Shown here in pieces: positions 3,045 through 64,000 of a DNA stretch of 64,000 nt (its first letter is position 1; the number at the start of each line of letters is the position of its first letter). The DNA comes from Isurus oxyrinchus (taxonomy: Eukaryota), in contig JANJGN010000075.1 in assembly GCA_026770705.1 (NCBI GenBank), forward strand, positions 2,418,001 to 2,482,000, in the 5' to 3' direction. The notes beneath the pieces were generated by a model that saw nothing but the letters and a program-made list of their open reading frames with translations, did no database searches and had not been told where the DNA came from. A program made the position numbers and the translations under genes.

Positions 3045-3119
3045 CTGAAAAGGGAGAAAATGAAGTGATTAAATGAAGACCAGAACCTTCCCTTATTCCC
3101 AAGAATCGGAGATCGATAC

Positions 3120-13270: not shown

Positions 13271-14171
13271 AGGGTACTCTCAGTGTTTGAATATTTTTTT
13301 TTTATGGTAGAGGTGTGTAGATTCTTGGTAAGCATGGGGTTACCGGGGGTATGAGAGATTCAGATGACGTAACCAACAGATCAGCCATGATTTTATTAAA
13401 TGGCGGAGCAGGCTGAAGGGGCCGAATAGCCTTCTCCTGCTCCTGCCTGTGTGTCTGTATCTGCGTGTGTCTCTCCCCCTGTATGTGTGTCTTTGTATCT
13501 GTCGGTCTTTCTGACTCTATGTGCCTATCTCCTTCTATGTAGCTGCTTCTGTGTATGGTATGCCTTTGTCTGCGTGTCTGTTATTCTCTAGTTAGGAGCA
13601 GTTCACACAGGTTTCACTGAAAGCTAGGCTGAAGAGTTCAGGAAAGGCTGGGAAGATTGGATCTATACTCAATCGCACTTGAAACCTGAGTGTTGGACTA
13701 ATAAAAATATATAAGGTAACCAGGGTCTTTTGTAGACTAGACACTAGGAGAATGTTCACCCTGTTGGGTGACTGAGAACTAGGAGGCAGAATTTAGGAAG
13801 AACGATTCAACCAGTGGAATGGAGCCGAAGAGGAATTTGTTTCCACGGGAGCTTTCTTCGTCAGGGAGCAGTGGAGGCTGGGACATTTAGTATATCCACG
13901 GTTGTGATCTACAAAGACATCAAGGTGCTGCGGGCCAGACAAGGAATGCCACAATTACATCAATATCGATCTCATTGAATGGCGGAGCAGGATCGAGGTT
14001 CTGAATCGCCTACACCTGCTCCCATTTCTTATGAACTAATGATCGTATGATCTTAGATAAGGGTTCAAAATTGAATGGAATGTTTAACTTTGTAAGGGGA
14101 GCATTGAAACTGTGGTGCAAATCGATTCCATTTGAACTATCCAAAGACCACTGCACATACAATTCAACAGT

Positions 14172-15113
14172 CTTATGTAGCCAAGTGGTTATGGTACTGG
14201 GTTTGTAAACCCAAGATCAAGAGTTCAAATCTCACAATGGCAAAACTATGAAACAATGTAACTTCATCTGAAACAGATGGAAACGGGTTTGTACTTGAAA
14301 GAGTTACAATTCAACAGGCCTATGTAGCCAAGTGGTTATGGTACTGGGTTTGTAACCCCAAGAGCAAGAGTTCAAATCTCACAATGGCAAACTATGAAAC
14401 AATATAACTTCATCTGAAACTGATGGAAACGGGTTTGTACTCGAAAGAGTTACAATTCAACAGGCCTATGTAGCCAAGTGGTTATGGTACTGGGTTTGTA
14501 AACCCAAGATCAAGAGTTCAAATCTCACAATGGCAAAACTATGAAACAATGTAACTTCATCTGAAACAGATGGAAACGGGTTTGTACTTGAAAGAGTTAC
14601 AATTCAACAGGCCTATGTAGCCAAGTGGTTATGGTACTGGGTTTGTAAACCCAAGATCAAAAGTTCAAATCTCACAATGGCAAAACTATGTTACCAACAG
14701 GAGAAGGTCAGTTCAAACAGCACTGGTTTCTTCTAGGCTTGGCCTAAATAGCCAAGTGGTTATGGTACTGGGTTTGTAACCCCAAGATCGAGAGTTCAAA
14801 TCTCACAATGGCAAACTATGAAACAATGTAACTTCATCTGAAACAGATGGAAAACGGGTTTGTGCTCGAAAGAGTATCAAGAGTTCAAATCTCACAATGG
14901 CAAACTATGAAAACAATGTAACTTCATCTGAAACAGATGGAAATGTGTTTGTACTCAAAAGAGTTACAATTCAACAGGCCTAAGTAGCCAAGTGGTTATG
15001 GTACTGGGTTTGTAACCCCAAGATCAAGAGTTCAAATCTCACAATGGCAAACTATGAAACAATGTAACTTCATCTGAAATGACAGATGGAAACATGTTTG
15101 TACTCAAAAGAGT
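14172..15113 (+). mobile_element. Tandem array (about 7 full or partial units, 146-147 bp period) of a young tRNA-Thr(TGT)-like SINE
   Basis: Unit TAGCCAAGTGGTTATGGTACTGGGTTTGTAA(A/C)CCCAAGATCAAGAGTTCAAATCTC...GAAAGAGTTAC has A- and B-box-like motifs. CCAAG anchors at 14181, 14328, 14474, 14621, 14752 and 14988. Flanked by a 14-bp direct repeat tacaattcaacagt. Confidence 0.88.
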
Positions 15114-30830: not shown

Positions 30831-32507
30831 TAAGCAGAAAACAAACTGAAAGGATAACAGAGTGAATATCGGCCGAGATTCCCGTCAGTGACTCCGGGGA
30901 ATCGGCCCAAGAGTAGGGTCAGCATGTCCCCTGGATGGAGATCTCAAACACAGCCCAAAGTAAATGTTGAATCTTGAATCTTTAATGTACAGCAGAGGAG
31001 TTTGACACATTACAGGGTAGATGGAGGCCATTCACCATACTAAATATTCTGGATCTGAACCTTTCCCCACATAACCCAACTTCATGTTCGTAAATAATCC
31101 GTTCCATTCAAATAGATTCTCAAAGTTCTGGTCGAATCTGCTTGCACCATTCTTACAGGAGATCATTCCAGATCAATCCAAGCCTCAATGTGAGAATCTC
31201 CATGCTAATTTTCACTCACCTAGACATGTTAGATCATTCATTGATAATTACAGATCAATTTGCGAAATGAAACAGGTTCTCCCTATTCTGTCTATGAAAT
31301 ATAAATAGGATTATGAATACATCTGCAAGGTCCCTCCTGAACCTTTTCTGCTCCGAAAAGAAGGAAAAGCAACAAAACAAAACAAAACAAGTTTCTCTCG
31401 CCTCCCAACTTCTCTGAATTGCTTCAACTCCGGAAAAATAATCATCGTTTCTATAATTACGGATCGGACATTATTCAACTCAACTCAAGGCCTCTGGGGA
31501 TCCTGCAAGTTAATCAGCTGATCTCGAGGTCGGACTCAATCGGACACAAATAGCAGCGTTAGTGTTTGATTTCTCCATCATGTCCTCTCCCTTAACTGAA
31601 AGAGGTGACTTACCCTTGAACACAGTTCTAGGGCAAATCTCTCTCTGCCTTGTCCTTCGGTGGTAAGGGTATGGTTGAAGTCTGAGCTCGGATGCTGTTT
31701 TCCATTGAAACGAGCTGATGACAGAAGGTGTAAAGCAGGGCGCTGACAGTATCCTCAGCGGACATCCATTATCGACGCATTGAAACGGGGCCAGTACATG
31801 CCTCTTAAAAGCAGACTCTGCTCTCTGCTCTGACCTAAATCGCTAGCATCTCCCATAAAGTAAAAGCAGATTCACTCCCACCCCGTTCCTCGCAACATAG
31901 TCAAGTTTCGACACGGGCAATCCAACCTGATATGATGTACAGCAAACCAGTTGTTGTTTTTATTCTGTTAGCTACCAGATATCGGACACCTCATGCCTCA
32001 GTCCCACTCTCAGTCTCACTGTTCGAGTTACCCACTGACACAACACAGACCAGAAACCCAGTGGCTTCTACACAAGATTGTTTCACAACTCACCAAAGAG
32101 CAGTAATGAGACGCCTGTCTCCATGTTCCAGTACGAGCTACTTCGAGACATGAGATCTGGAAGGAACTGCGGCTGATTCCCTTTACCCAGGGCTCAGAAT
32201 TTCAAACCAGAAAGCGTTGAATGAGAGAGGAAACAGAGGCTGGGAGGAAGTGAGGTGGTCACCACAGTTAAAGCAACAGAACTAATTTTTATACAACATG
32301 TAATGAGATATGGATGTGATTGCTGCATGATTGAAAATGTTATCCTTTGTAAGTTAAACAATGATCACGTGTTGAATGGGCCACAATGGGTTATCCAGAA
32401 GGAAGAACGGCCTGAAATATTTGGCTGTTTTTGTGAGTTTGTCTTTCATCATGGTCAGGAGCACTAAATCTGGGAGGAATCGTTCCTCACATCCATCTCC
32501 CGGCCTT

Positions 32508-48830: not shown

Positions 48831-48836
48831 TTTATT
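48831..48836 (-). terminator. Candidate polyadenylation signal of receptor gene B
   Basis: AATAAA on the minus strand about 530 nt after the stop, in repeat-free 3' UTR-like sequence; a second one at 48906-48911. Confidence 0.5.
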
Positions 48837-49368
48837 GCGAAAATGAAAGCGCGGGATTGCTTTATAACCAGACTGGGATAAAATTAAAATAGCTTCCAAA
48901 GTATCTTTATTAACTATAGCAATAACAAAAATCGCTTCCCCAGCAACCAACATGAGTAAAACCCCGCTCTGAAATGGCAATGGATTTTGGCCTTCAGTTT
49001 GTGGGCGTGGAGAATTGCCTAATCTTAGCACAGAGAATGTAATATGGCGGAGGAAGGGAATAATCAGGCAGTTGGTAAAGGGCAGGTCATCATCGGTACC
49101 AGTGGTTGAAATCAGTCCCATTCCATAAGCGTCGCCTGATCCATCTCTCCGCATCTTCATTCTGGCACTCGTCTCAGACGGGACCGGCGCCCAGGGACAG
49201 CTATTCAGTGAATGGGCTAGAACATCACCTGAGCTTGGAGTTGTCGTTAAAACTAGCTGTAGATCAAGAGTTTCCTTGCATAATCGTGGAACAGGGTGGC
49301 TCGTTCATGGTCATTAAGCAGATCGGCACTGGGCTTCTCGCTGAGGGCCCGGGACCTCTGGGATTGTT

Positions 49369-49434
49369 CTACAGCTTCACCGTTGCGTAGAGGGTGCACT
49401 CCTCACTCTGGGCATGGCTGGTATCTCGCTGACA
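49369..49434 (-). CDS. Receptor gene B terminal coding exon with ITSM
   Basis: ttgctttcatcatcag|TGT CAG CGA...ACC CTC TAC GCA ACG GTG AAG CTG TAG = (CQ)RDTSHAQSEECTLYATVKL*. Phase 0; alternative in-frame acceptor at 49428. Confidence 0.82.
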   Translation of the reverse strand, partial: CQRDTSHAQSEECTLYATVKL

Positions 49435-49889
49435 CTGATGATGAAAGCAATCGTGCAATTGGTCAGAAATTCAGCAATCGTCTTAAAATGTGAGCAGAAA
49501 GAGGCAAAAACTCAGCAGCGGGCTTGGTCTTGTGATCAGATGTTAATATGGAGCAGACCTCAATGTCAAAGGGGATTGACTGTCTGCTTCTTGTTCCTTT
49601 TCCCAGTGAAGCTATTAGCACAGAGGGGAGCTGTTTCTTGTACTAACAAGTAGGGACTCACCAGCAAAGGCAGGGAAACAGGAGATTCCGAAAAATTTAG
49701 GAGTTTACGACCTGAGCGATAAGTACCCCACCCCTACGAAACACCACTACTCCCCACCCCGCCAACCCGCACCCAGCCCCACCCCCATTCCCCGCACAAG
49801 CTTTTTTCACTTAATTGGGAAGGGATACTCTCGGGATGTGCATTGTTAGGCCGATTCCCGATCACCAGAAGAGTATAAAAGCACAAGGT

Positions 49890-50450
49890 ATTAGATTAGG
49901 AGTAGGCTATTCGGTCCCTCGATAATGTTCTGCCCTTCGAAAAGGTCATAGATAATCTGATTGCGTCCTTAACTCCACATTCCGATCCCTCCCCATCACT
50001 CTTCACTCCTTTGGCAGTGTAAATTCTATCTAACTCAGCCATTAGTACATTCACTGACCCAGCCTTTGCTGCTCTCTGGAGGAGATAATTTCACAGACTA
50101 CCGATTCACTGAGATAAAAAATTCCTCCTCGGTTATGCATGGGAGATACCTTATTTTTAACTCCCACCCCCTCCCCCTGGTCTATTTTCTCCTTGGTGTG
50201 GCAGTATCCTCTGAGTATCTACCGTGTCAAGCTCCCTCACCCCACTAGAATCAATTTGATTCCAATATGATGATCACACTTTCGCCTGAACCGAAGTTTG
50301 TATAGGCCCAACCTGATCCACCTTTCCTCATAAGTTTAGGCTCTCAAACCAGTGATCAGCCTAGTGAAATTTCTTTGAACTGCTTCCAATGCAAATACGT
50401 CCGCTCCATAAATATTAAGATCAGGACCGCACATGCGTGGTCTCACCAAA
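49890..50450 (-). mobile_element. CR1 3' fragment (intronic)
   Basis: Reverse-complement CR1 tail (ggagtaggctattcgg) through gtggtctcaccaaagccct. Confidence 0.75.
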
Positions 50451-51234
50451 GCCCTATCAGCTACCATTTTATCTCACAGTAAATGTTTCTACTTTTATCA
50501 ATGCAGCATCAAAAAATCGAGACAAAACAACTTCCATGTTATGATACAATAATGCATGGTGCTGGACATTGGAATTTCACACTTGTTCAGTCTGGGAAAT
50601 AGAAATATGACTTGCTTCGATAATAATCTTTCTTGTATTCCACACACAATCCATATAGGAGCAATAACAGTAACATTTGAACAGTGCCTGTACCCGGTTC
50701 TATGGGGCTATATTTAAGATATACAGCTGCAAAAACGACATCTAAACTTTCAATTTACTTCATGGCCTGCACAAGGATCAACTCTTCACTTCTTTTTCAA
50801 AGATTCGTGCCCAAATGAGGTTCGGCTGTTCAATCCACTGAGACAAATATTGTTCAGTTGGATTCTCTCCCCCGCATGCATTTCAGTGGCAATTTTAAAT
50901 GTATTAAAGCTGTGATCGAAAATATATTTGTTCAATTAAACATTTACCAACGGACAAGTCGATAATGACATTAAAAAAGAGAACAAGGACTCAGAGGGTG
51001 AATGAAGCAAAATATTGCTCACATCCTTCTAGGTGTCTGAAGGAGCAAAATAGACAAAAGATCATCAGAGGATAGACAAAATTGCCCCCTGACCCCCGCA
51101 CACCCCACTCCCTCAAGCTTCCACCCACATGTATGCACCCACATTCGCACAGATACTGAGGCACACACGACTCACACCGCAGAGCCCGCTCACACACACA
51201 CAGACAACCCATCTGCTCATAGCACCGCCCCCTC

Positions 51235-51590
51235 AACCACCCACAGCACCCATCCCCTCAGCCGCCCACAGCAACCCCACCCCACCCTCAGCCGCCCACA
51301 GCCACTCCCCCCCCCACCCTCAGCCGCCCACAGCAACCCCCCCACCCTCAGCCGCCCACAGCAATCCCCCCACCCTCAGCCACCCACAGCAATCCGCTCT
51401 CCCCTCAGCCGCCCACAGCAACCCCACCCCGCCTCAGCCGCCCACAGCAACCCCCCCCCACCCTCAGCCGCCCACAGCAACCCCCAACCCCTCAACCACC
51501 CACAGCACCCCCAACCCCTCAACCGCCCACAGCAACACCCCCCACCCCCCTCCGCCGCCCACAGCACGCCCAACTCCTCAACCAACAACA
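51235..51590. repeat. C-rich minisatellite (about 26-31 bp unit)
   Basis: ccctcagccgcccacagcaacccc repeated about 12 times. Confidence 0.92.
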
Positions 51591-51608
51591 GCACCAATTG
51601 CAACTTAC

Positions 51609-51649
51609 ATCTTCTCCCTTCGGATTTGTTTGTAGGATAAGATCAGCGT
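51609..51649 (-). CDS. Receptor gene B cytoplasmic exon 3 (second part of ITIM)
   Basis: ttttggttttatttag|AC GCT GAT CTT...GAA GAT|gtaagt; 41 nt, phase 1/0; (Y)ADLILQTNPKGED. Confidence 0.82.
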
Positions 51650-51999
51650 CTAAATAAAACCAAAACATGTTAAAAATAACATTGATGTGTAAGTGCTGAC
51701 AACATTTGTCCCTTTTAGGGAAGAGTTTGATGTCTATGGTAGGTCTGTTTTCTCGAGGATGCTTCATTAAGTAACCCTCGCTGCCAACGGATGGGGGCAA
51801 CTAATCTTCAACCAGCACAAAGAGGCCTTAGATAGCTCGTGATGGAGCGAACACACTTCCAAAATTGGTCTTTCAGCCCCATGTTCTTCTCAATCCAGGA
51901 AATAGATCCTGCAGGTTTTTCCCCGGGAATGAGTAGCAGATTGACTCTGAGTGGCTCTCTATGCTTACCAGCATCACAAATTCAATATGATGTGGCAAG

Positions 52000-52290
52000 G
52001 TGTTACAGGCTCAACGCACAGGGGAGACCACTTAAGACTGAGCAAAGGAGAAACTTCTTCACTCAGTGCGTTGAAGCTCTGAAATGCTCTCCCACAGATG
52101 GCTGTGAAGGACAAATTACTAAATATATTTAAGAAGGAAATAGAATTATAGAATCTAAAAGTGTCAAGTGTTATGGAGCGAAAGAGAGAGTATGGAGTTG
52201 AGATAAGTAATCAGCCTTGATCAAATTGAATGGTGGAGTAGGTTTTAAGAGCCGAATGATCTACGTCTGCTCCTATATTCTAGGTTTCTT
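52000..52290 (+). mobile_element. CR1 3' end (intronic)
   Basis: GRPLKTEQRRNFFTQ motif and gccgaatgatctacgtctgctcct tail. Confidence 0.8.
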
Positions 52291-53333
52291 TGCTTCAAGT
52301 CAGTCAGTTTAAACCTCACTTATGCCTCATATTTCACCCAGCCTCCTCTTAAAAACTTCTAAATGTTTCGGGTCGACCACTCCCAGGGCGTGTTCCATAA
52401 TCCCAGCATATCTGGGTAAACATTCCCAGTTGAAGTCCAACGCCCGGGTTTCCGGACGAAAAACAAAGCTGGCATAACAGTGCAGCACTGAGGGGGCGCT
52501 GCACTGCTGCGTCGATCTGCAAAGAAAGGCTCCATCTGCTACCTTGGATGATGAAAATGATCCCGGGGGACCTTAGAATGGGAGTTCTCCGAGTTGTGGA
52601 GATTGATGGAAGCATGTGACTGCTGCTGCAGTCCGTAAATTAAGTTTGGTGTTTCTAATGATTAACCTCTCTGGAAAATCAGATCCATAACAATTGCAAA
52701 GCGCTTTGGAGGCGTCCATTGGTTGTGTAAATTATTTCATGAATGCAAGTCTTTCGTCTTTTTCTTTCAGATTATTACATTCATATCACACTATTGCTTC
52801 ACGAGGGAGCTACCGTGTTCATCGCCTCTGATTTTTCTATCTCCCACAACTAGAAATATGATTGTGTTTCAAAGAACTCGATTAGCCAATCCCTCAGCCT
52901 CCCATTTTCATTAGCAATGAGGCCCAGCGATTCTAAACCCCTGCTGAATGTTAGACATTTTTCGATCATCCTGGTAAATATTTTAGACTCACTCAAGTGT
53001 CTCTGTACATGTGTTTTTATCCTACGCCGATCAGCATTGTTTTCGGTACTAGTTTTGCCGCACATTCCACTTAACCTTTTGACTTTTCAATTCTATCCCT
53101 TCCGAAATCACCTGCTTGGAGCGTGAAAGGAGAGTTAACTTTCGTCGCTTCATTTAGCAATTTGTATAACTGCAATTCCTGATACACTTCCTACTCTGCA
53201 ACTTTTAAGCTTTCATTTTCAATGTTTTCTGCAAACTGCTCAACATTCCCTGCCGGTTATTATTCATGACGCGCTGACAAATTTTTGAGCACAAAAGACA
53301 ATTCTGATTGTGGGAATTTCAATCTGAACTCAC

Positions 53334-53377
53334 ATGTCAGGTGTTCGTTGTTTTGCTCTCCAGAGGGCACCGCGTTC
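53334..53377 (-). CDS. Receptor gene B cytoplasmic exon 2 (first part of ITIM)
   Basis: cttttctattgtttgaag|G AAC GCG...CTG ACA T|gtgagt; 44 nt, phase 2/1; (R)NAVPSGEQNNEHLT. Confidence 0.8.
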
Positions 53378-54216
53378 CTTCAAACAATAGAAAAGATCAG
53401 GTAGTCACTTAATCTGATATGATCCGTGTCATTAAACACATGAGGCAGGCATTGAATAGACAGGAGGCGGGATTCCCATGTTTAGTGTAAAAGCTTTCCT
53501 GTTTGCGTGACCAGGAGCATGTTTCTATTAAACTGTTTCAAACCCAGATTATTACAGAGAACAAAGACAGAATTTATGAAGGGAATGAAACGCGCGCACA
53601 TGTTTGAAAGTAAGGCTGCGCGCAAAGGGTGAAAGAGCACGCGCACGAATCGGCCTCAAATGGCGGTAGAGGCCGAATCTTTGAATGATCTTAAGGTAGG
53701 GAGAGAGAGATACCTGAATAGCAAGCGGATGAAAGGTTGCTCGCCTTGGACGCACATGTGGGTTTCAGTTTCCAATTGGATCATCCATTACCGTACTGAA
53801 TGGCGGAGTCGTTTCGAGGGGCAGCGTGGCCTACTCCTGTTCTTAATTCGGATCCCTAATTACCCTTGGGGGCTTAAGAACAAGGGAAGGAGATTCAGCC
53901 CTCGAACCTGCTCCGCCATTCCATAAGAACATGGCTCACCTGATTGGGGTTTCAACTCCACTTTCCTGTCTGCCCACATGCCCCTCGACACAATTGCCTA
54001 TGAACAAGACAAACTCCATTTGTCAGCCTTGAGCATATTCAGCATCCACTGCTCTCTGGGTGAGAGGGTTCCACAGAAAAAAAAACACCCTCCGAGAGAA
54101 AAAACTGGAGTTGTTTCACAATCAGTGATTCAATGGCAGAAATATTTGAAAGGGTTAATTATATTCCTCCGCTTCTGCATTAATTCAACAACACAGTAGA
54201 GAAAGCAGGCGCAGGT

Positions 54217-54288
54217 AGGGCTGTAGCTTGGTGGTGGAGCTCTCGTTTCGCGTGTAGGAGGCCCCAGTCTCGATGTCCAGCATCTCAA
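54217..54288 (+). pseudogene. tRNA-Ala(CGC)-like pseudogene, full length but heavily mutated
   Basis: agggctgtagcttggtggtggagctctcgtttcgcgtgtaggaggccccagtctcgatgtccagcatctcaa (72 nt) aligns by eye to tRNA-Ala; stems are broken. Confidence 0.6.
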
Positions 54289-54505
54289 GGCTGCAGGATT
54301 TAAAAGGACATTATATATATATTAAACGCGCAGAGCACGCCAACAAAGCCACGGGAATGAAGATTAGAGTGCAGGTGTGAAGTGGAGACCTCGTGTTTAA
54401 ATGAAAAATACACAATGCTTTCCTAGAATAGAAATTGCCTAAATAATGGCTTCTGATCATTATGTTGGTCACATGTCATTGAAATGCAACACCTTATGGT
54501 CTCAC

Positions 54506-54533
54506 CTGGATTCCATATTGCTTTTCTTCTTCC
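54506..54533 (-). CDS. Receptor gene B cytoplasmic exon 1 (basic stop-transfer)
   Basis: atgtttccttctcag|GG AAG AAG AAA AGC AAT ATG GAA TCC AG|gtgaga; 28 nt, phase 1/2; (G)KKKSNMES. Confidence 0.82.
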
Positions 54534-55724
54534 CTGAGAAGGAAACATAAGGATTAGAAGTCCGGAACAGAATAGAAGTTTGAGTGCTCATGGGTGGAGT
54601 TGTCCAGCCAGGTAAGGATTGGTAACAAGCCACTCTAACGTTCAGATCAGATTAGTCTGGTACATTGGTTGAAGGAAAGCTTGTTTGCGAGTCTTTCAAC
54701 ATCAAGGTTAGGGAGCATTTCTTAAGGGAAAATGCCCATTGAGCAGTTTGTGTGTCTCAGAAAGGGGGGATGCCGAGGAGCGGGGGCAGGGTGGGTGGGG
54801 GGATGTGGGGGTGGCAGGGGGCGATATCAAAGCAAATGTACCATTAGTTTGCAGAGGGTTACCCAAGGGTAGAATGGCAGTGGGCTAGGAAGTACAGTGC
54901 AGAATGGAGAAATGGATTGTCACTGACATTCAAAAGTCAGAATCGTCCAGATAAGGAAGGCCGCTGAACGCAGCCTCACTCATCCCCCCATCCCCCCCAC
55001 CCCTCCCCTCCCCATGACTGTGCCCCAATCCCATTGCAAATTCCATACGTTTTGTCAATAATTCCAAGACGTTCCTCTCCAGGACATAACCTGTTGTAAT
55101 TCCTTTTAGCCCCATTAGTGATTGAAAAACTTCCTTATATCTGACCCAGTTTACATTACAGCAGCTGGAGTCTGCTTACATTTGTCTAATCCTGATTTCC
55201 TGCCATGTTCCAGATTCCATTCCATCGTTTCTCTGAACAACCTCTATAAAATCACGACACTGAGCTCTCCCTCCATTCTTCTCAACCTAAGAGTTTTGCT
55301 GTAGATATTTGAATTTGTTGGATTTTTGAATGCGATACTGCTTATTCCATCCCCAGCCTAGGAACAATTCTACCAGGTGATATGTCCTGGACAGCTGCCC
55401 AAACGCAGCAGTGCGGCTGAGGACCGCATCATGAACCAGCCATCTGTTCAGCTCTTGTGAAATCAATGACGCCGGTATTGGATGGAGCTTCTGACAGGTG
55501 GTTGATGTGATATTCCCGGTCTTGCTATTCCACCCAAGGGTAATTTCCACCCATGAGTTTGCAATTGACTATTTCACCCTTCATACAGGGATCACCCTAC
55601 ATTTAATGTTGAAGTTTAGGCCGTTGGTGTTTTAGGGATTTAGTTCATACTGACCACACATTGTCTACATTTATCTTCATCGGTTCATTTGTAATCACTG
55701 GTTGTTACACGTGGTCTGACCTAC

Positions 55725-55817
55725 CTTTTATCCAGAGGCAGACACCCAAGAGAGCAAGGAGAAGAATCAGACCCAAAGCAGAACCAACACCAGCAGCCAG
55801 AGCAACAGGATTATTTT
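55725..55817 (-). CDS. Receptor gene B transmembrane exon
   Basis: ttccccctttacgtcattcag|...ATA AAA G|gtaggt; 93 nt, phase 1/1; (E)NNPVALAAGVGSALGLILLLALLGVCLWIK with no charged residue in the helix. Confidence 0.88.
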
Positions 55818-56175
55818 CTGAATGACGTAAAGGGGGAAGAGTAGTACAGTGTTAATTAACATCTTCTACAACCAAGGCAATAATCTGCAGCTTAATCAGC
55901 ACAACAGTTGGGGCACGAGTGCCATAGAAAACAGAGGGTCAGAGACAGAGAGAGATACAAACACAGAGTAAGAAAATTATCCAGCAGAGAAGACCATTCG
56001 GCCCATCGCGCATGCGCCGAACCCTTGAAAGACATGGTCAATTAATCCACGGTCTTATCCCATTCGTTCTTTCCTCTTAGCCCTGCAAATTTTATTTTAA
56101 CATGTATTCTCAGTTCAGGTTTTAAAACTGTTGAATTGCACTCTGTCGTGTTTCAGATCACAAAAAAAAAATTAC

Positions 56176-57260
56176 TTAAAGTATAACCTCCACGCAGGTT
56201 GTTTTGCCAATTCACTTTAATCTGAGCTCCCTGGTTCGAATCACTCACCGGCAGTGCACGGAGATCCGGCCTGTTTAGCTAAACAAATTACATCAGCATT
56301 TCGAACCGTTCTCTTAAATTACCAGTTAACATTCTTTCCGGGTCAGAAGATGCAGCACTTTCCTCACTTCCGATCCGTTTTGTGAAGTGTTTTTCTTTAG
56401 GCTTTACATTACTTGGATAGCTTGACCTAAATATCCAAGTGGTTATGGTACTGGGTTTGTAACCCCCAAGATCAAGAGTTCAAATCTCACAATGGCAAAA
56501 CTATGAAACAATATAACTTCATCTGAAACAGATGGAAACGGGTTTGTATTCGAAAGAGTTACATTACATGGATAACTGTTGCAGCCTTTGGTATTCACAG
56601 CCTGAATTCAATCCCATGTATCGATGGCGCACATGAAAACACTGCTTTAAACAAAAAAAGCCAAACAGCGATGAAATTGGCAAGGCTCTGGCAGGCGGGT
56701 GGTGTGTTAATACCCCTGCTGGAATGACCCAGTAGAATGCTCAAATGCAATTGGTCGGCTTCTAACTTGCGCTATTGTATCCTCAAATGTTTCCTTGGAT
56801 ACTAGCCGATTATCTACTGCCAGGCAATTATTGTATTAATCCAGGCTAATGGGAAGAAGTGTGATTTCACTGGGTCAATACTGCACACGGGAGAAGAGAA
56901 CGGGCTGCTCTCATTTGGAAGCCAGTTTGAACTGTTAAGTGCGCTCCTTCGTCTAATCAGGTAAAGGGCACAGGTTGAAATTGAAACTGTAACATCTTTT
57001 ACTACTGTCGGATGGATATGTAAACTACGAATCTGCCTAAAGAAAAACACTTCGCAAAATAGATCGGAAGCGTGGAAAGTGTTGCATTTACTGACCTGGT
57101 ATGAATGTTAATTGGTAGTTTAATTGAACATTTCGAATTGCTGATGTAACTTCATTAGCTAAACAGGCCGAAGCTCCATACACGGGAGGGACAGATTCAA
57201 GCCAGGCATCACAGGTTAAAGATAATTGGCAAGATTACCAGAGGGGAGGTTATTCTTTAC
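56176..57260. repeat. Intronic inverted repeat (about 225-bp arms)
   Basis: 56176-56402 matches the reverse complement of 57035-57260 (ggcctgtttagctaa...ttacatcagca...cttccgatc...gaagtgtttttctttaggc). Confidence 0.8.
56420..56558 (+). mobile_element. Solo copy of the tRNA-Thr-like SINE with 16-bp TSD
   Basis: Nearly identical to the array units at 14.2-15.1 kb; flanked by ttacattacttggata (56404-56419) and ttacattacatggata (56559-56574). Confidence 0.9.
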
Positions 57261-57759
57261 GTAAACAGCACACAGTATTACAGTGATGTGCATAGGGTCA
57301 CTCAGAGCCGAGGATAGATTTCCTCCGTTAATCAGTGCATCAAACCGACAGTTATAAATTCCTATCTCAGAGTGATCGACATTCTTGATAATCTTTTAAA
57401 TGAAAACCAAATCAACAAAATTGGGATAAATCAGGCAAGTCGACATTCTTGATGGTGAAGGTGACAGAATTGATCCCTGAAGCAGGAGACTTGAACCCAT
57501 CGTGATTCGCATCACCTTATCTGTGTAGGTAAAACGTGATGGTAGGATTGCCCCGGGATTTGTACAGTGAAATGTAACATTCCTGCCCTGAACAACTGCA
57601 CTAGATCCACGGATATGTATGTTTCAGGAAGACCTGGTATTAGCATCGAATATGTAGGAACGATTGATTCAAAATTCAATTCTGACTTTTGCCAAAAATG
57701 AATATTACCAAAAAATAACTAAGGCTAAAATTTCATGAAACGCTGCTTAGTCCTTATAT

Positions 57760-58525
57760 CAAAACAGAACATGGAGCAAAGACTCAAGAGTTCAGGCAGG
57801 ATGTGTGGCCGGAAAACAGGCCTCACGTTTCCAGTCCAGAGGACTCTTCTTCAGACCTAAAGGTAATTAGAAATGTGATGGATTAAATAGTGAAAGAGGG
57901 TGGAGCAGGTGGAACAAAATTGATGGTCATGTGGAGTTGGGAGCTCAGTTGAAATTTGAGAAGGATGTCATCGACACAAGACAAATGGAATGGTACTGAA
58001 AGTGTGAAAGACGAAAGAAGATGCTAATAATTGCATAAAGATATGGTAAGAATGTGTTAATTGAGCACTTTTAAGCCTTTTGGACTTAACGTCGATTTCA
58101 ACAACCTCAGTCATGAACTGTCTCCTGCATCTTCATATGTTTCCGGTACCTTCTCCCTGCCAGGCCCATCTGTAACCTGTTTTGCTGTCAGTGATAACCT
58201 TAGTCCTGACATTGACACATTCTGCGACCTTAACTTTCAGCCGCTATTACCATCTTCTTTGGCCTTCAACGCTACCACTAACACTCAATTGTCTTTTCTT
58301 CCTGCCACACTTGTCAATCTTCCTTGAGTGTCCACTTATCCCTGTCCTGCTGCTCTACTCCAGCTTCTCCACACCCCTCCCCAACTCTGAAGAAAAGTCA
58401 TAGAGAATCGAAACGTTAACTCTTGATTCTAACTCAGCAGACGCTGCCAGATCTGCTGAGCCCTCCAGCATTTTCTGTTTTTATTTCAGATTTTCAATAT
58501 CCGCTGAATTTTGCTGTTATTTTAC
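57760..58525. mobile_element. Penelope-like remnant with inverted terminal repeats and hammerhead-like cores
   Basis: CTGAAGA...GAAACGT on minus (57823-57855) and on plus (58387-58420), followed by gctgccagatctgctgag...cagcattttctgtttt. Confidence 0.65.
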
Positions 58526-59442
58526 TGGATAGCCCTCACGTCGAATGCTGTGCCCAATTAGGGGCGTCACAATTTGGGAGGGATAGCGAAGCCCTGTCAA
58601 GCAGGCAGGGGCAATTTTCTGGAAAGCTTTGAGAGAGGAGGGAGTTCGGCGTGGAGAGAGACTGCGAAGCTGGGAAATTTCTCGCAGTTCAGCGATTGTT
58701 AAGCGCGATTTTCATCGAGCTTTGCAAAGTTACTAAAGACTTCTGGATTATGGAGCTCAAGTCCGAGACTATAAGCATCTACCCACGACAGTGCAGCACT
58801 CCCACAGTAAAGGCAGCGGGTGGAGTGTCCGGCTGCATTTGAGGAACTCATGAACTGGTGAAATTTGACTCCAGTGCCTTATAATTCAGGCGATAGTGCT
58901 GCAAAAATAGTTTTTTTTCTAATGTTGAGACAGACCAATACATCTAACATTAGAATATATGGAAATAAAGCCAATTCGTGAGAATGAACCAGCACCGACG
59001 TGTAACTCTGCGTTGGTGCTGTGGCCTTGAACACCGAAGCGAATTTCTCACTGATATAACTCACAAAAAAGCCACTGTTTATTTTAACGGAACACAAAAT
59101 TTCCGACTGGGCCTAATTCAATGCCAATTAAGACGGTGACATTTCCAACCACTGGACACTGGCGTCCCCCAGTGACAGAACATTTCAGCTGCCGACTGTC
59201 TCCTCACATCACACACCTGCCTTCCTCTCATACCCACACCAGCCCCTGCAATCACAGCACATGTGCAGCGGGTGAATTCAGCCCCCAACGGAAAAATATG
59301 TGGAATGAGATCGCTGATCATTTGGACTCCATCTCCGCTTTCTTGAAACGATTCATATTGTTCCAGTGAATGAAGCGTTGTTTACTTGAGAATACCAACA
59401 CCATAAATAGGAATGTTTAAATATCTGTACTCTGTCACTCAC

Positions 59443-59736
59443 CTTCTATGGTCACCGTGACAGCCTGGCTCTGTTTAGAATCGAACTGCCTGCTCTGGAC
59501 GGTAACACTATATTGACATCGGTATTGTCCGCTGTGGCTTAGACCGCTATTCGGGAATGTGAACGTTTTGGAAGTTCTGCTGGTTGTATTAAAGGGCAGC
59601 TGTTGATGTCCTTTATAAAAATGAAACATTTTCTCTCGATTATCTCCAGTCACGGTGCAGGTCATGTTGATCGTCTCTCCTGCTGCATACACACCCGTGG
59701 TCTGATCAAGATATATCACTGGGGTTTTTAGCGGAT
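59443..59736 (-). CDS. Receptor gene B membrane-proximal C2-type Ig exon
   Basis: tcactttaccacag| to GAAG|gtgagt; 294 nt, phase 1/1, open. (D)PLKTPVIYLDQTTGVYAAGETINMTCTVTGDNREKMFHFYKG...HSGQYRCQYSVTVQSRQFDSKQSQAVTVTIE. Confidence 0.92.
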
Positions 59737-60314
59737 CTGTGGTAAAGTGAATGAAAGGATCTTTGAGATATGGATCAGAGCCTTTCCGTGGACAGCAGCA
59801 CATTATAAGTACAATAATTGATCTGTGTCGAAGCACCGTGTTTACAAGTGTTTGAGACTTTACAAATGTGGAGGTCAGCATGTGATGATTCAGGAAGGAG
59901 GATAAGTAAACCCATTTCCAAACGCCAATCCGGAAATCGGGCCTTCCCTAACAGCTCCGCAGCTGACAAAGTGCGACTGAAGTGTATTCAACATGGTAAT
60001 TGAGGAATCGCACCAGCTGATTTGGGCACAGCAAGATGCCATTGACGGACATCAATTAATGGCGGCACACTCAGTGATTTCTCCCTCGGTGATGTTGTTT
60101 AAACGATGTTTTTTGGCCAGTGGATACCGAAGAGATGTTGCCACTGATCTGATTCACGAAAATGCAGCTACTTATTTTAAAGCAACACGAAACTGCTGAC
60201 TGGGCGCTCATTTGAATGCCCCATTAGAATTAGGTGAGATCAGTGAGTCCCTTAGCATTGGAACCGGGTGAGATCCAGCCTTCATTATGGATGTCAAATC
60301 GTTGAGTATATAAA

Positions 60315-60620
60315 TCTACCTCCGACAGTGCAGCACTCTCTCAGGACAGACACCGGGCGAGTGTCGGCATGGATTATGGAGCTCAAGTGCTAGATTGTTT
60401 ACATCTACCTCCGGCAAAGCAACTTTCCCTCAGCACTGGTACCGGGGGTGTATCGGTCTGGATTATGAAGCTCAAGCCCTAGAGTGTACCGCCGACAGAG
60501 CTGCATTCCTTCAGTTCTGGCACTGTCTGGATCAGACTTCCGGGATATGGAGCTCCACAAGGAGTTAGGATTGATCACGCAACCTTCTGACTTTGTGTAG
60601 CGTGCTACAGATTTGCTGAG
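60315..60620 (+). repeat. Deu-domain SINE-derived tandem repeats
   Basis: Repeated ccgacagtgcagcact...cagtactggcaccggg...ggattatggagctcaag; related blocks at 58740-58875 and 62350-62720. Confidence 0.6.
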
Positions 60621-60729
60621 GTCGTGAATGACGATAGTACAGCACAAGCTGAGGTAATTTCAGCAGCGGATATTTAAGAAAACTGCCACCTCTAATTTCA
60701 CAACAATTTACTCAACACATTGACTTGCG

Positions 60730-60912
60730 AATATATTGGCGTTCCTTCACTGTCGCTGGGGCAAAATCCTGGAACAGCTCTGTGGGTGTATTCACACCAC
60801 ATGGCCTGCAGCTGTTCAAGAAAGCATCTCACCACAACTTTCTCAAGGACAAAGAGGGATGGGTAATACTTGTTGCCACAGCCAGGGAGGCCCACATCCC
60901 ATGAATGAATTT
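60730..60912 (+). mobile_element. 3' end of the second LINE family
   Basis: gttccttcactgtcgctgggg...gcccacatcccatgaatgaa; reverse complement of the 45480-45670 sequence. Confidence 0.75.
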
Positions 60913-61404
60913 AACTGTAAATGAAACCCTAACAGTGAAAGGTTTGAACGGTGCATCCAGTCCCAGGGAATGTCGGATTTGGGATGTGGTTTCCCTATTG
61001 TTTGACCGCCTCAATGGTCATGTTTGGACAGTAAGGCCCACTATGATTTCAGAAAGAGCACAAGCCAATCGCAAGGTGGACGGTAACGTCACTCAACATG
61101 GACACTCCATCACGCTGTGGCAGGATCCTTCAGCTGCTCACTGTCCACCCACACCCCGCATGACCCTACTTCTGCTGCTCTGCCCTTCCCGTCTCAACAC
61201 TTGCAGTGGTAGTTGATGCCCAGTTGGTGTATTCGGGACACATTCTTACAGGGGAAGTGGCAGGACTTGAGCAATATAGTCAATAGTTTTCGCATACACT
61301 CCTCTCCCCGAACACTGTTTCATTTTGATGCAGGGATCTGAAATTGTGAATATGCCAACCCTGGTGAATAGACATATTAATAATCTCTGTTCTCTGTCAC
61401 TCAC

Positions 61405-61698
61405 CTGTGGCAGTCACAGTCACAGCCTCACTCTTTGAGGATGTTAGTTGCCGACCTCTGATTGACATTCCGAATAGGCATTGGTATCGCCCGTTGATAC
61501 TTCTACCATTAACCCGGAATGTTCCAGTATTGTCATGTGTGTCAATTTGCCATGAGTGCAGCTGTGCATCAAATCTGTAAAAGTAGAAGGTTTTCTCCCG
61601 AACATCCCCAGTCACAGTGCAGGTCATGGTGATCATCTCCCCTACAACATACACCCCTGTCGACTGATCAAGTGTTAACTTTGGTTTTCTTAGCGGCT
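61405..61698 (-). CDS. Receptor gene B C2-type Ig exon (middle)
   Basis: ttttttatatcacag| to ACAG|gtgagt; 294 nt, phase 1/1, open. (E)PLRKPKLTLDQSTGVYVVGEMITMTCTVTGDVREKTFYFYR...INGRYQCLFGMSIRGRQLTSSKSEAVTVTAT. Confidence 0.92.
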
Positions 61699-61964
61699 CT
61701 GTGATATAAAAAAAACAATAAAAAGTCAATTATAAAAGAATCGCACGAATGTAATGTACAGTAACTAGTTGTCCCACAAATTCAATTGACCCACGCCGAG
61801 GGAGACTGTGTTCATCAGTGAATGCGTTTGAGAAAGGTTGAGTTGCGGAATTGATTAAATTTAACAAATAAATAATAAATTTCAAAGCGCATTTCAGAAT
61901 TTTTTTCTCTTTCAATGTTGCAACAGACTTTCAGGCGCTCTTTGATATATCTAAATCTGACTGT

Positions 61965-62155
61965 TGATGTGTGTGTGCGTGTCTGTGCTTGGATGGGTTT
62001 GAGACTATTTGTTTGAGATTCTTTGAGGAAGTGTGTGCGTGTGTGCACATGTTTGTGTCCCTTTCTGTGTGTAGTGTATGTGTGCATGCTTGTGTGGGCT
62101 TGTGCGTGCGTGTTCATGTGCTCGTGCATTTCATGTGCGCGTGTGCCTCCGTGTA
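61965..62155. repeat. Degenerate (TG)n repeat in the duplicated intron unit
   Basis: tgtgtgcgt runs; paralog at about 63810-63915. Confidence 0.85.
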
Positions 62156-63260
62156 CCATATGGGCTTCAAATGGTCAGCAGTAAAGGCAAGTGGGACCGC
62201 GTAAGGACACCTGAGAGGCGGGACTCTAGACTTTTTATCATTGGCTCATCTGAAATCCTTTACGTCAATTATTACAACTCTCCCACTTTACTCAATCTAT
62301 CAGGGAGCTTGGACACTGGTCTTAACGTCCGATAGGGCATCCATCAAGTTCCTACTGTTCAGCACTCACTCAGCAGTGGGTCTGGATTATGGAGTTTAAG
62401 TCCTGGAGTATATACACCTACCACCGACTGTGCAGCGCTCCGTCTGCACCGGCACCGGGGACATGGTCAGCCCTGATTATGGGAGCACAAGTGCAAGGGT
62501 ATGAACATCTACCTATGACAGTGGAGCAAGCCTTCAGTACTGGCACCGGGTGTGGTGTGGGTCTCTATTATAGAGCTCAAGTCGAAGGTAATACGCACCT
62601 ATATCCGACAATGCTGCACCTCCTCAGTACTGGCACCAGGGGGAGCGTGGTCCTGGATGATTGATTGCCAGTCTGAAGTGGAGTTTGATCACACAGGCTT
62701 CTGACTTTGGCTAGCGTGCTATATTCTTGGTGAGGAAGGAATGAAGATTTTCCATGACAAAACAGGTAACGTCGGCATCAGTACGGAGAATTAAAGGCAA
62801 ACGGTGAAAGGATTGGAAGGTACATCATGACACACCGCATATGGTTTTGTGATGTGGTTTTTCTATTGCTTGGACGCCTCAATAGCCGTGTTTGGACCAT
62901 TGAGCCTGGTATAATATCAGGAAGGGCATCAACCAACACTGAGGTAGGCCGTGACGTCACACAGCAATAGACGCTCCCTCCCCCATTGGCAGAATCCTTC
63001 AGCTGCTGACTATGCCCTCACATCCTCCTCCTGCTTTCTTCCCACCTCAACACTTACAGTGTTAGTTGATGCCCAGCGGGTGAATTCAGGACCCGTTCTT
63101 TCAGGGAACTAATCAGGACTTGAGCAATGAAGTCAATGGTTTTCGCATGTGGTCTTCTCCCTGAAAACTGTACATTTTATTTTGATGCAGTGTTCTGAAT
63201 TTGTGAATATGCTAATTCTACTGAATAGAGATGTTAACAGTCTCTATTCCTGTCACTCAC

Positions 63261-63554
63261 CTGTGATAGTCACGGCCACAGCCTCGCTCTTTGGAGATGT
63301 TAGATGCCGATCTCTGACGGAAACTCTGTATTGACATTGGAATAGCCCTTCGCTAATTCTACCTCTAACCGGGAATGTTCCAGTATTGTCATTTGTGTCA
63401 ATTTGCCAGGAATACTGTCGTTCGTCATCTTTCTAAAAAGATAAGATTTTCTCCCGATCATCCCCAGTCGCAGTGCAGGTCATGGTCCCCGTCTCCCCTA
63501 TTACATACACTCCTGTCCATTGATCAAGTGTTATAACTGGTTTTCTTAACGGCT
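63261..63554 (-). pseudogene. Receptor gene B distal Ig exon with in-frame stop (missed by the ORF track)
   Basis: tttttaaaatcacag| to ACAG|gtgagt; 294 nt. (E)PLRKPVITLDQWTGVYVIGETGTMTCTATGDDREKILSF*KDDERQYSWQIDTNDNTGTFPVRGRISEGLFQCQYRVSVRDRHLTSPKSEAVAVTIT, with TAG at 63433-63435. Confidence 0.88.
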
Positions 63555-64000
63555 CTGTGATTTTAAAAAAAATGGACAAGTCAATTGTAACTGAGTCGCC
63601 CGAATGTAATGTTCTGTAATGGTTGGTACCACAAAGACAATTGAGCCGTACCGAAGGAGTCCGTTAACTTCAGCGAATGAGATTCGATGAAGGGTGAGTC
63701 GGGGTGTTGACTGAACTTAAAAAATAAATAATATATTTAAAAGCGCATTTGGAAAACTCTTTTTCAAAATTGCAACAGTGTATCAGGCGAGTTGTGAGAG
63801 AATTAATTCTGTGCGTGTTGCAGTGTTTGTCTGTCTTTGTGCGTTCCTGTGTTTGCGTGCGTGTGCGTGCATGTTTGTGGGCGCGTGGGCTTGCGTTTCG
63901 TGCGCGTGTGTGCCTCCATGAAACAGGTTGACTGCAGCCGGTCAAAAAAAGCGGCTCATCAGGACCTTCCAAAGGGAAATCATGGATGGCAATTTTTTGA

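What the first reader, a model, noticed from the sequence alone, without database searches (positions are those of the whole stretch)
49369..63554. Multi-Ig inhibitory immunoreceptor gene (LRC-like ectodomain, ITIM plus ITSM tail) in probable shark DNA
Seen: eight minus-strand exons with canonical AG/GT ends whose phases chain (1/1, 1/1, 1/1, 1/1, 1/2, 2/1, 1/0, 0/stop). The seven open exons give Ig-Ig-ENNPVALAAGVGSALGLILLLALLGVCLWIK-GKKKSNMES-RNAVPSGEQNNEHLT-YADLILQTNPKGED-CQRDTSHAQSEECTLYATVKL*. Established: an uncharged TM with (I/V/L/S)xYxx(L/V) and TxYxx(V/I) motifs marks SHP-1/SHP-2-recruiting inhibitory receptors (KIR-L, LILRB, CD33-related Siglecs, PD-1). Inference: a member of a cartilaginous-fish receptor family analogous or homologous to LRC/CHIR/LITR genes. 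The TM and tail are invisible in the ORF track. I cannot tell whether it is already annotated.
Basis: partly seen in the sequence, partly recalled or inferred. Interest (0 to 1): 0.88.

Follow-up and report, generated by a model that had tools for sequence, protein, structure and literature searches.

The report
Shark inhibitory multi-Ig immune receptor gene
This is a real, transcribed shark gene for a cell-surface receptor with antibody-like domains and an inhibitory signalling tail, one of a family that genome pipelines have already predicted in other sharks but that reviews still describe as missing from cartilaginous fish.

Summary
All eight minus-strand exons lie at the stated coordinates, have AG/GT ends and chain in phase. 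The first Ig exon carries an in-frame TAG.

Searched exon by exon, the last Ig exon, the TM exon and three of the four tail exons (cy2-cy4) match a great white shark RefSeq model. That model is XP_041035999.1, auto-named 'Fc receptor-like protein 5', and the matches are 86-100% identical. It has the same LTYADL (ITIM) and TxYxxV (ITSM) tail.

Contigs of two public runs of the same organism join Ig1 to Ig2 exactly at the predicted sites. None covers the stop-bearing exon, which therefore looks skipped.

I added three things: a decayed ninth Ig exon at about 57276-57633, the gene's 5' end lying beyond the window, and a downstream pseudogene paralog.

The family occurs in sharks, rays and a chimaera, and includes activating-type members with a TM arginine. 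Its domains sit about equally far from FcR/FCRL and LRC domains, so 'LRC-like' is unresolved.

The TM-to-tail splices of this copy, its tissue and its ligand were not tested.

It is a new member of a known kind, of moderate interest. Papers from 2014 and 2026 say such receptors are absent from cartilaginous fish.

The parts
63261..63554 (-). Ig0: a 294-nt phase-1/1 Ig exon of the same subtype as Ig1 (80% nt identity). It has an in-frame TAG at 63433-63435 and is probably a skipped pseudo-exon.
   Evidence: The TAG is kept in 3 of 3 X1 DNA contigs over it. Depth is 0 in 3 of 3 RNA-like runs.
61405..61698 (-). Ig1: an open 294-nt Ig exon (Pfam Ig_3) with Cys26 and Cys73.
   Evidence: Covered end to end by X9 record 28 and X6 record 13, and joined to Ig2.
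59443..59736 (-). Ig2: an open 294-nt Ig exon (Pfam Ig_2, Ig_3, ig, I-set) with two N-x-S/T sites. It is 87% identical to the last Ig domain of Carcharodon P0155.
   Evidence: The joint 59736|61405 is seen in two runs. X6 record 11 stops fitting exactly at the donor 59443.
57276..57633 (-). Decayed Ig exon of the membrane-proximal subtype found in relatives. It has a TAA stop, at least two frame changes, an insert of about 54 nt between direct repeats, and no GT at the expected donor.
   Evidence: tblastn of the stored family proteins gave 47 hits, the best P0012 at 61% with E 4.6e-16. The sequence was read.
55725..55817 (-). Exon for the stalk and an uncharged transmembrane helix, followed by a basic stop-transfer sequence.
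   Evidence: It is 26 of 29 identical to P0155.
54506..54533 (-). cy1: a 28-nt tail exon, phase 1/2.
   Evidence: It is 6 of 7 identical to P0151. This is weak evidence on its own.
53334..53377 (-). cy2: a 44-nt tail exon, phase 2/1. It ends with the first base of the ITIM tyrosine codon.
   Evidence: It is 13 of 14 identical to P0155.
51609..51649 (-). cy3: a 41-nt tail exon, phase 1/0. It completes the ITIM LTYADL.
   Evidence: It is 13 of 13 identical to P0155.
49369..49434 (-). cy4: the last coding exon, with the ITSM TLYATV six residues from the C-terminus and the stop TAG at 49369-49371.
   Evidence: It is 18 of 21 identical to P0155.
48831..48911 (-). Two AATAAA hexamers, 460 and 535 nt after the stop. 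They are candidate polyadenylation signals only.
   Evidence: No read evidence.

Best explanation
The region is the 3' four-fifths of a transcribed shark gene. The gene encodes a type I membrane receptor of a chondrichthyan multigene family of Ig-domain receptors, related to the FcR/FCRL and LRC receptor families. The mature message uses Ig1 and Ig2, plus at least one more Ig exon and a split leader that lie upstream of the window. It then uses a TM exon and four small tail exons. Two further Ig exons in the gene body are dead: Ig0 has a nonsense codon, and the exon at about 57.3-57.6 kb is decayed. Both are left out, which costs nothing because every Ig exon is phase 1/1. The tail carries LTYADL (ITIM) and TLYATV (ITSM), with 28 residues between the two tyrosines. 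The inferred mechanism is as follows. On ligand binding next to an activating receptor, Src-family kinases phosphorylate both tyrosines. The tandem SH2 domains of SHP-1/SHP-2 (possibly also SHIP or SAP-type adaptors at the ITSM) then dock and dampen the cell. Shown here: the exons, the phases, the motifs, the homology, the Ig1-Ig2 splice and the absence of Ig0 from RNA contigs. Inferred: the TM and tail splices of this copy, phosphatase recruitment, leukocyte expression and the ligand.
For: The exon anatomy and phases are. Pfam finds Ig_2 and Ig_3 on both open Ig exons. phmmer of Ig2 against 1.84 billion representatives gave 893 hits at E<=0.001, led by shark proteins that were named. The Carcharodon model P0155 ends with a TM and tail almost identical to the exon-wise translation here, junction products included. 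All 10 stored proteins that my motif scan flagged with a complete tail carry both an ITIM and an ITSM; they come from about six genes of Carcharodon and Cetorhinus. Ray and chimaera relatives end in similar xYAxVKL or xYATV motifs. In the laid runs, X6 record 13 and X9 record 28 join 59736 to 61405 with 0 other letters. X6 record 11 leaves the genome exactly at the Ig2 donor and runs on for 531 nt. Ig0 has depth 0 in 3 of 3 such runs. The AF2 model of Ig2 has pLDDT 87 and an Ig fold. Its nearest folds are LAIR-1, LILRB4, CHIR-AB1 and FcgRII.
Against: No read or contig was laid on the TM or tail exons, because the single read-laying run went to 58001-64000. Those joints are therefore not shown for this copy. 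The runs are labelled 'RNA?' by guess. They are contigs at depth 6-15 from one sample, and a hole in contigs proves nothing. The gene holds two dead Ig exons and sits next to a pseudogene, so it could itself be decaying. Its 5' end is outside the window, so an intact start and leader are unverified. The tissue of the runs is coded, so immune expression is unknown. The cy1 match is only 6 of 7 residues.
Confidence: 0.75

Rival explanations
1. It is a transcribed pseudogene or a decaying family member. The locus is still spliced and transcribed but no longer makes a working receptor.
For: Two of five Ig exons in the gene body are dead. The neighbouring paralog has a TAA in its D1 exon and a 32-nt S2 exon that is out of phase with D1. 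RNA contig depth is low, at 6-15. The 5' end is unseen.
Against: Seven exons are open with intact splice sites. The tail is 86-100% identical to the Carcharodon counterpart, with both tyrosine motifs kept. The dead exons are phase 1/1, and Ig0 is absent from the RNA contigs. The Carcharodon model P0155 also goes from this Ig subtype straight to the TM.
Confidence: 0.17
2. It is a non-immune adhesion protein of the Ig superfamily, as some automatic names of relatives suggest (perlecan-like, CADM4-like, CD166-like, PECAM-like, CEACAM5-like).
For: Those names are attached to close relatives. LRIG1, contactin, titin and VEGFR2 domains also score against the domain profile.
Against: The names differ between isoforms of the same gene, so they reflect similarity alone. 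The tandem paralogs, pseudogenes, conserved ITIM plus ITSM tail and sister forms with a TM arginine and short tail are the pattern of paired immunoregulatory receptors. The top solved relatives are FCRL5, PIR-B, FCRL4, FcgRI, LILRB, LAIR-1 and CHIR.
Confidence: 0.05
3. The small tail exons are a chance chain, and the true transcript ends soon after the TM exon or after cy2, giving a tail-less isoform.
For: Carcharodon isoforms P0002 and P0003 end right after the cy2-type sequence. P0002 ends in the residues that read-through of the cy2 donor also gives in this window.
Against: Other isoforms of the same Carcharodon genes (P0151, P0155) carry the full tail. cy3 and cy4 here are 13 of 13 and 18 of 21 identical to P0155 and have canonical splice sites. 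A short isoform may exist alongside the long one rather than replace it.
Confidence: 0.03

Closest known systems
Carcharodon carcharias XP_041035999.1 (P0155) and its isoforms, auto-named 'Fc receptor-like protein 5', with neighbouring models on the same 2.7-Mb scaffold
   Same: It has the same last-Ig subtype (87%), TM (26 of 29) and tail exon products, ITIM LTYADL and ITSM TxYxxV. It ends in VKL and goes straight from this Ig domain to the TM.
   Different: The upstream Ig domains are of another subtype. Ig0 and Ig1 here match D2-type domains of other family members at 58-73%.
Human FCRL5, FCRL4 and the classical FcgR receptors (FcR family)
   Same: These are the best sequence matches among solved structures: FCRL5 at 4.6e-22 with the domain profile, FCRL4 at 5.7e-9 and FcgRI at 1e-7. 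They have multi-Ig ectodomains with one exon per domain and ITIM-type tails.
   Different: The FCRL5 score is a sum over nine domains, and no single stretch passed on its own. The leader of the neighbouring paralog is split 31/32 nt, not the 30/21 bp described for FCRL1-6, FcgRI and FCRLB (passage of PMC2413239). Linkage and Ig binding are unknown.
LRC receptors: LILRB/PIR-B, KIR, LAIR-1 and chicken CHIR
   Same: They are the nearest folds to the Ig2 model: LAIR-1, LILRB4 D1 and CHIR-AB1 (TM-score 0.78, rmsd 2.4). PIR-B at 6.4e-10 and LILRB2 at 1.4e-6 match by profile. They share paired inhibitory and activating forms, the activating ones with a TM arginine near the outer face, and show birth-and-death evolution with pseudogenes. 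The closest bony-vertebrate hit is a turtle 'alpha-1B-glycoprotein-like' protein at rank 9.
   Different: Sequence identity is only 16-21% in the fold matches. The tail has ITIM plus ITSM rather than two to four ITIMs. The linkage group was not testable.
ITIM-plus-ITSM tails of PD-1, BTLA, PECAM-1, CEACAM1 and CD33-related Siglecs (recalled, not fetched)
   Same: The order is a membrane-proximal ITIM followed by a C-terminal ITSM, with spacing suited to tandem SH2 binding (28 residues between the tyrosines).
   Different: Their ectodomains are unrelated. The resemblance is in signalling logic only.
Teleost leukocyte immune-type receptors (LITRs) (recalled; none fetched under that name)
   Same: A fish multigene family of multi-Ig paired receptors with affinities to both FcR and LRC. 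Teleost proteins with many VTYxxV motifs appear among the hits.
   Different: Identity is only 25-32%. No curated LITR sequence was compared.

Membership tests
ITIM/ITSM inhibitory immunoreceptors (functional class) | Type I membrane protein with an uncharged transmembrane helix | tested here: met
   The TM exon has no charged residue in the hydrophobic run and is followed by basic residues.
ITIM/ITSM inhibitory immunoreceptors (functional class) | Cytoplasmic (S/I/V/L)xYxx(I/V/L) and TxYxx(V/I) motifs, conserved in relatives | tested here: met
   LTYADL and TLYATV are present. Both motifs occur in all 10 stored lamniform proteins that the scan flagged with a complete tail. Similar motifs occur in rays and a chimaera.
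ITIM/ITSM inhibitory immunoreceptors (functional class) | Phosphotyrosine-dependent recruitment of SHP-1/SHP-2 | not testable with these tools
   Needs peptide pull-down or binding assays.
ITIM/ITSM inhibitory immunoreceptors (functional class) | Expression on leukocytes | not testable with these tools
   Spliced contigs exist in runs X6 and X9, but their tissue is coded. PMC11372145 (one passage read) lists auto-named fcrl3 and fcrl5 in bamboo shark B cells. That was not shown to be this family.
Chondrichthyan family of RefSeq models (Carcharodon, Cetorhinus and others) | Exon-by-exon protein similarity over Ig, TM and tail | tested here: met
   Identity to P0155 is 87%, 90%, 93%, 100% and 86% for Ig2, TM, cy2, cy3 and cy4. 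Ig0 and Ig1 are 72-73% identical to P0001.
FcR/FCRL family | Signal peptide split 30/21 bp (passage of PMC2413239) | tested here: not met
   This gene's own leader is outside the window. In the neighbouring paralog S1 is 31 nt from the second ATG and S2 is 32 nt. The test is therefore on a paralog only.
FcR/FCRL family | Ig domains that group with FCRL D1-D5 subtypes | tested here: inconclusive
   FCRL5 is the best PDB sequence hit, but as a sum over nine domains. CHIR-AB1 (25.7 bits) and FcgRIIa (25.5 bits) tie as single domains. No tree was built with curated references.
FcR/FCRL family | Linkage to the FcR locus and binding of immunoglobulin | not testable with these tools
LRC family (LILR, KIR, PIR, CHIR, LAIR) | LRC-type Ig fold | tested here: inconclusive
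   The Foldseek top hits are LAIR-1, LILRB4 and CHIR-AB1 (TM-score 0.72-0.78), but FcgRII follows closely (0.62-0.66) and E-values are only about 1e-4.
LRC family (LILR, KIR, PIR, CHIR, LAIR) | Second leader exon of about 36 bp (recalled, not verified in a paper here) and phase-1 domain exons | tested here: inconclusive
   S2 of the paralog is 32 nt. All Ig exons are phase 1/1, but that is common to many Ig-superfamily genes.
LRC family (LILR, KIR, PIR, CHIR, LAIR) | Location in a leukocyte receptor complex | not testable with these tools
   No flanking marker genes in the window.

The most novel reading that the evidence does not exclude
This family is the cartilaginous-fish branch of the receptor lineage that gave rise to both FcR/FCRL and LRC (LILR/KIR/CHIR) receptors. 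It already has paired inhibitory (ITIM plus ITSM) and activating (TM arginine) forms. That would place the origin of these paired receptors at the base of jawed vertebrates. It would also supply the candidate Fc or MHC class I receptors that reviews say sharks lack.
Probability: 0.35. Interest if true: 0.72.

Novelty: new member of a known kind. Interest (0 to 1): 0.45.

Why it matters
Two papers state that FcR-like receptors are absent from cartilaginous fish. I read passages only: PMC4016189 (2014) and a June 2026 review, PMC13337447. The 2014 paper also finds no all-C2 LRC-type homolog in sharks or lamprey. The 2026 review asks how sharks manage Fc-dependent phagocytosis without such receptors. 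This locus is a spliced, transcribed, all-C2-type multi-Ig receptor with a canonical inhibitory tail. Its family spans sharks, rays and a chimaera, and its nearest solved relatives are FCRL5, PIR-B, LILR, LAIR-1, CHIR and FcgR. If the homology holds, the stated gap is an artefact of the older assemblies. The family would then give concrete candidates for shark Ig or MHC receptors. Against this, the proteins are already in RefSeq for related species under automatic names. One single-cell paper already lists auto-named fcrl genes in shark B cells. The gain is therefore curation and evolutionary placement, not discovery of a new kind of system.

Tried and rejected
Orthology, leader structure in intact genes and synteny could therefore not be checked.

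Other genes in the window: 10 of the 27 ORFs of 110 aa or more between 3.2 and 49 kb gave 0 Pfam matches. The other 17 were not scanned.

S1 of the paralog near its S2: a strict scan of 3060-9100 found nothing. tblastn later placed an S1-like exon at 32.1 kb.

The search for homologous proteins with the C-terminal 187 residues of P0155 gave only 8 lamniform proteins, and no entry marked as encoded by this window. It sees only proteins of 293-931 aa, so this does not show the gene is unannotated.

The ESM Atlas lookup gave FCRL2, IGSF1-like and FCGR3 clusters at 0.93-0.94, which does not discriminate.

I considered and dropped a domain tree. No curated mammalian FCRL, LILR or KIR sequences could be brought in as stored proteins, and the automatic names of bony-vertebrate hits are unreliable labels.

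Ten literature searches found no paper describing this shark family. The library holds open-access papers and bioRxiv only, and supplements were closed. A description in a subscription journal or in a supplement cannot be excluded.

All searches were exon by exon.

Full report
OBSERVATION

I located each boundary by its sequence.
- Three 294-nt Ig exons: Ig0 63261-63554, Ig1 61405-61698, Ig2 59443-59736.
- A 93-nt TM exon: 55725-55817.
- Four tail exons: 54506-54533 (28 nt), 53334-53377 (44 nt), 51609-51649 (41 nt) and 49369-49434 (66 nt, ending in TAG).

All acceptors are AG after a pyrimidine-rich run. All donors are GTGAGT, GTAGGT, GTGAGA or GTAAGT. The phases chain as 1/1, 1/1, 1/1, 1/1, 1/2, 2/1, 1/0 and 0/stop. 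The ITIM tyrosine codon is split T|AC between the second and third tail exons. Ig0 has one in-frame TAG at 63433-63435. The other seven exons are open.

IS IT MORE THAN CHANCE?

Every search was exon by exon.

Both open Ig exons pass Pfam thresholds for Ig_3, and Ig2 also passes for Ig_2, ig and I-set.

phmmer of Ig2 against 1.84 billion representative proteins gave 893 hits at E<=0.001 and 63 at E<=1e-30. The top hits are shark proteins, named:
- Cetorhinus maximus XP_078390385.1
- Carcharodon carcharias XP_041035990.1, XP_041036000.1 and XP_041036010.1
- proteins of Pristis, Mobula, Heptranchias, Mustelus, Pristiophorus and Scyliorhinus

The full-length Carcharodon isoform P0155 (XP_041035999.1) ends with a TM and tail nearly identical to the exon-wise translations here, including the residues made across the junctions. 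Local BLAST of each exon peptite against the stored proteins gave these identities to P0155: Ig2 87%, TM 26 of 29, cy2 13 of 14, cy3 13 of 13 and cy4 18 of 21. cy1 matched 6 of 7 to P0151. Ig0 and Ig1 are D2-type domains, 72-73% identical to a domain of Cetorhinus P0001.

RNA EVIDENCE

The look-up of sequencing runs listed four small runs of the same organism, labelled 'RNA?' by guess. They held 0.10-0.11 of the words of 55700-61700, and the three exons there make up 11% of that stretch.

- X6 record 13 (573 nt) and X9 record 28 (651 nt) both pass from 59736 directly to 61405 with no other letters. That is the predicted Ig1-Ig2 splice, so these runs hold spliced RNA of this very copy.
- X6 record 11 (578 nt) fits the last 47 nt of Ig2, stops exactly at the donor 59443, and runs on for 531 nt that lie nowhere in the laid stretch.
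- The two bins over Ig0 have depth 0 in all three RNA-like runs.
- In X9 record 28, the 58 nt before Ig1 were laid on Ig1's own 3' end with 10 other letters, not on Ig0. Ig0 and Ig1 also differ at exactly 10 of those 58 places. Even so, a segment identical to Ig0 should have been laid on Ig0, which lay inside the stretch. I therefore read the upstream exon as a further Ig exon outside the stretch, and Ig0 as skipped.

This last point is an inference from low-depth contigs of one sample. The tool itself warns that a hole proves nothing.

The TAG in Ig0 is kept in the three X1 DNA contigs that cover it. A G>A difference at 59459 is silent. It appears in the DNA run and in two RNA-like runs.

tblastn of all stored family proteins against the window found a ninth Ig-like exon at about 57276-57633, between Ig2 and the TM exon. 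It belongs to the membrane-proximal subtype seen in relatives such as P0158 and P0012. It is decayed: it has a TAA, at least two frame changes, an insert of about 54 nt flanked by a direct repeat, and no GT at the expected donor. The Carcharodon model P0155 likewise goes from the Ig2-type domain straight to the TM.

No leader or D1-type exon lies between 63555 and 64000, so the gene's 5' end is outside the window.

Downstream on the same strand lies a paralog.
- A D1-type exon at 73-357 with an in-frame TAA.
- A 32-nt second leader exon at 3013-3044, one base short of the phase D1 needs.
- A first leader exon at 32094-32124 with a GTGAGT donor in phase 1. From an upstream ATG at 32151 it is 89% identical to the N-terminus of Carcharodon P0151.

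Whether that S1 really serves the exons 29 kb away is open.

THE FAMILY

Named relatives include sharks, rays, a sawfish and the chimaera Callorhinchus. Automatic names are inconsistent even between isoforms of one gene: Fc receptor-like protein 5, LILRA6, IGSF1-like, perlecan-like, CADM4-like, CD166-like, PECAM-like, CEACAM5-like and uncharacterized.

All 10 stored proteins that my scan flagged with a complete tail have both an ITIM and an ITSM. They come from about six genes of two lamniform species.

Other members (P0012, P0040, P0144, P0165) have a conserved arginine at the outer end of the TM and a short tail without tyrosine motifs. That is the activating half of a paired-receptor family. 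The pseudogene D1 exon in this window is closest to one of these, P0040, at about 57-61%.

The closest hits outside cartilaginous fish that I named are a turtle 'alpha-1B-glycoprotein-like' protein (rank 9), a sardine 'IGSF1-like' protein (rank 15), a frog 'Fc receptor-like protein 5' (rank 19), a turtle FCRL5 (rank 29) and a turtle IGSF1-like protein (rank 50).

FCR OR LRC?

With a ten-sequence profile of the Ig1 and Ig2 subtypes (A1), the solved chains rank as follows:

| Chain | E-value | Note |
|---|---|---|
| FCRL5 | 4.6e-22 | nine domains; no single stretch passed alone |
| titin | 1.6e-11 | |
| PIR-B | 6.4e-10 | |
| FCRL4 | 5.7e-9 | |
| FcgRI | 1e-7 | |
| LILRB2 | 1.4e-6 | |
| CHIR-AB1 | 1.1e-4 | 25.7 bits, one domain |
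| FcgRIIa | 1.3e-4 | 25.5 bits |

LRIG1, contactin and VEGFR2 also score.

The AlphaFold model of Ig2 (pLDDT 87) is closest by Foldseek to LAIR-1, LILRB4 D1 and CHIR-AB1 (TM-score 0.78, rmsd 2.4). FcgRII comes next, at 0.62-0.66.

The leader split of 31/32 nt in the paralog does not follow the 30/21 bp rule given for FCRL1-6, FcgRI and FCRLB (passage of PMC2413239). The 36-bp second leader exon of LRC genes is recalled, not checked.

I conclude that the family belongs with the FcR/FCRL-LRC group of receptor domains but cannot be placed in either.

MECHANISM

The receptor has an uncharged TM. Its ITIM is LTYADL and its C-terminal ITSM is TLYATV, with 28 residues between the tyrosines.

From established knowledge of KIR, LILRB, PD-1 and PECAM-1 (recalled), such tails are phosphorylated by Src-family kinases and bind the tandem SH2 domains of SHP-1 and SHP-2. 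The ITSM may also bind SAP-type adaptors. None of this was tested here. The ligand is unknown.

Carcharodon isoforms that stop after the cy2-type exon (P0002, P0003) suggest that tail-less isoforms may also be made. In this window, read-through of the cy2 donor gives the same residues that end P0002.

WHAT IS KNOWN

Passages of PMC4016189 (2014) state that no FcRL, PIGR, FcRgamma or all-C2 LRC homolog was found in shark genomes. [quoted passage not shown]

One passage of PMC11372145 (2024) lists auto-named fcgr1a-like, fcrl3 and fcrl5 as expressed in bamboo shark B cells.

My ten searches of the open-access library found no paper that describes this family. Supplements were closed and subscription journals are not covered.

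The scan's own notes hold other ITIM-bearing Ig receptors elsewhere in this genome. I did not compare them.

VERDICT

The finding is real and the reading is essentially right. It is a new member of a family that is already predicted in databases but uncurated.

Its interest lies in the conflict with the published statement that such receptors are absent from cartilaginous fish, and in the paired inhibitory and activating design.

Still to be shown: the TM and tail joints of this copy, its 5' end, its tissue, its ligand and its phylogenetic position.

Noticed in passing
window 32094-32151 (-): A first leader exon with a GTGAGT donor in phase 1. It is 89% identical over 19 residues to the N-terminus of Carcharodon P0151/P0002. 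It lies 29 kb upstream of the only S2 and D1 exons found downstream, so it is either a very long first intron or an orphan exon.
   Followed up: partly
window 73-357 and 3013-3044 (-): Downstream paralog. The D1-type Ig exon has an in-frame TAA, and the 32-nt second leader exon is one base out of phase with it. D1 is closest to the activating-type Carcharodon protein P0040. The rest of the gene runs off the left edge of the window.
   Followed up: partly
stored proteins P0012, P0040, P0144, P0165: Family members with a conserved arginine at the outer end of the TM (PIRL...) and short tails without tyrosine motifs. They look like activating partners of the ITIM/ITSM forms. Which adaptor they would use in sharks is unknown.
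   Followed up: no
window 53323-53333 (intron after cy2) and protein P0002: Read-through of the cy2 donor gives the same residues that end Carcharodon isoform X2 (P0002). This hints at a conserved intron-retaining isoform that lacks both tyrosine motifs.
   Followed up: no
window 58464-58496 and 60740-60775: Short stretches with word depth in the thousands in both RNA-like and DNA runs, with many loose ends. They are probably parts of a high-copy interspersed repeat inside the introns.
   Followed up: no
window 51229-51595: A C-rich minisatellite with a period of 28 nt (also 58, 86 and 144 nt), starting about 14 nt after the cy3 donor in the cy3-cy4 intron. It creates long spurious proline-rich ORFs on the plus strand.
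   Followed up: no
window 14158-14964: A tandem array with a 147-nt unit, 3.6 copies at 96% match, plus an adjoining 89-nt array. The unit has a tRNA-like look, but its origin was not examined.
   Followed up: no
   Followed up: no
window 63425-63541: DNA run X1 holds two contig versions over Ig0, at depths 207 and 66, which differ at four places. Both keep the TAG. They may be two haplotypes or a close paralog.
   Followed up: no
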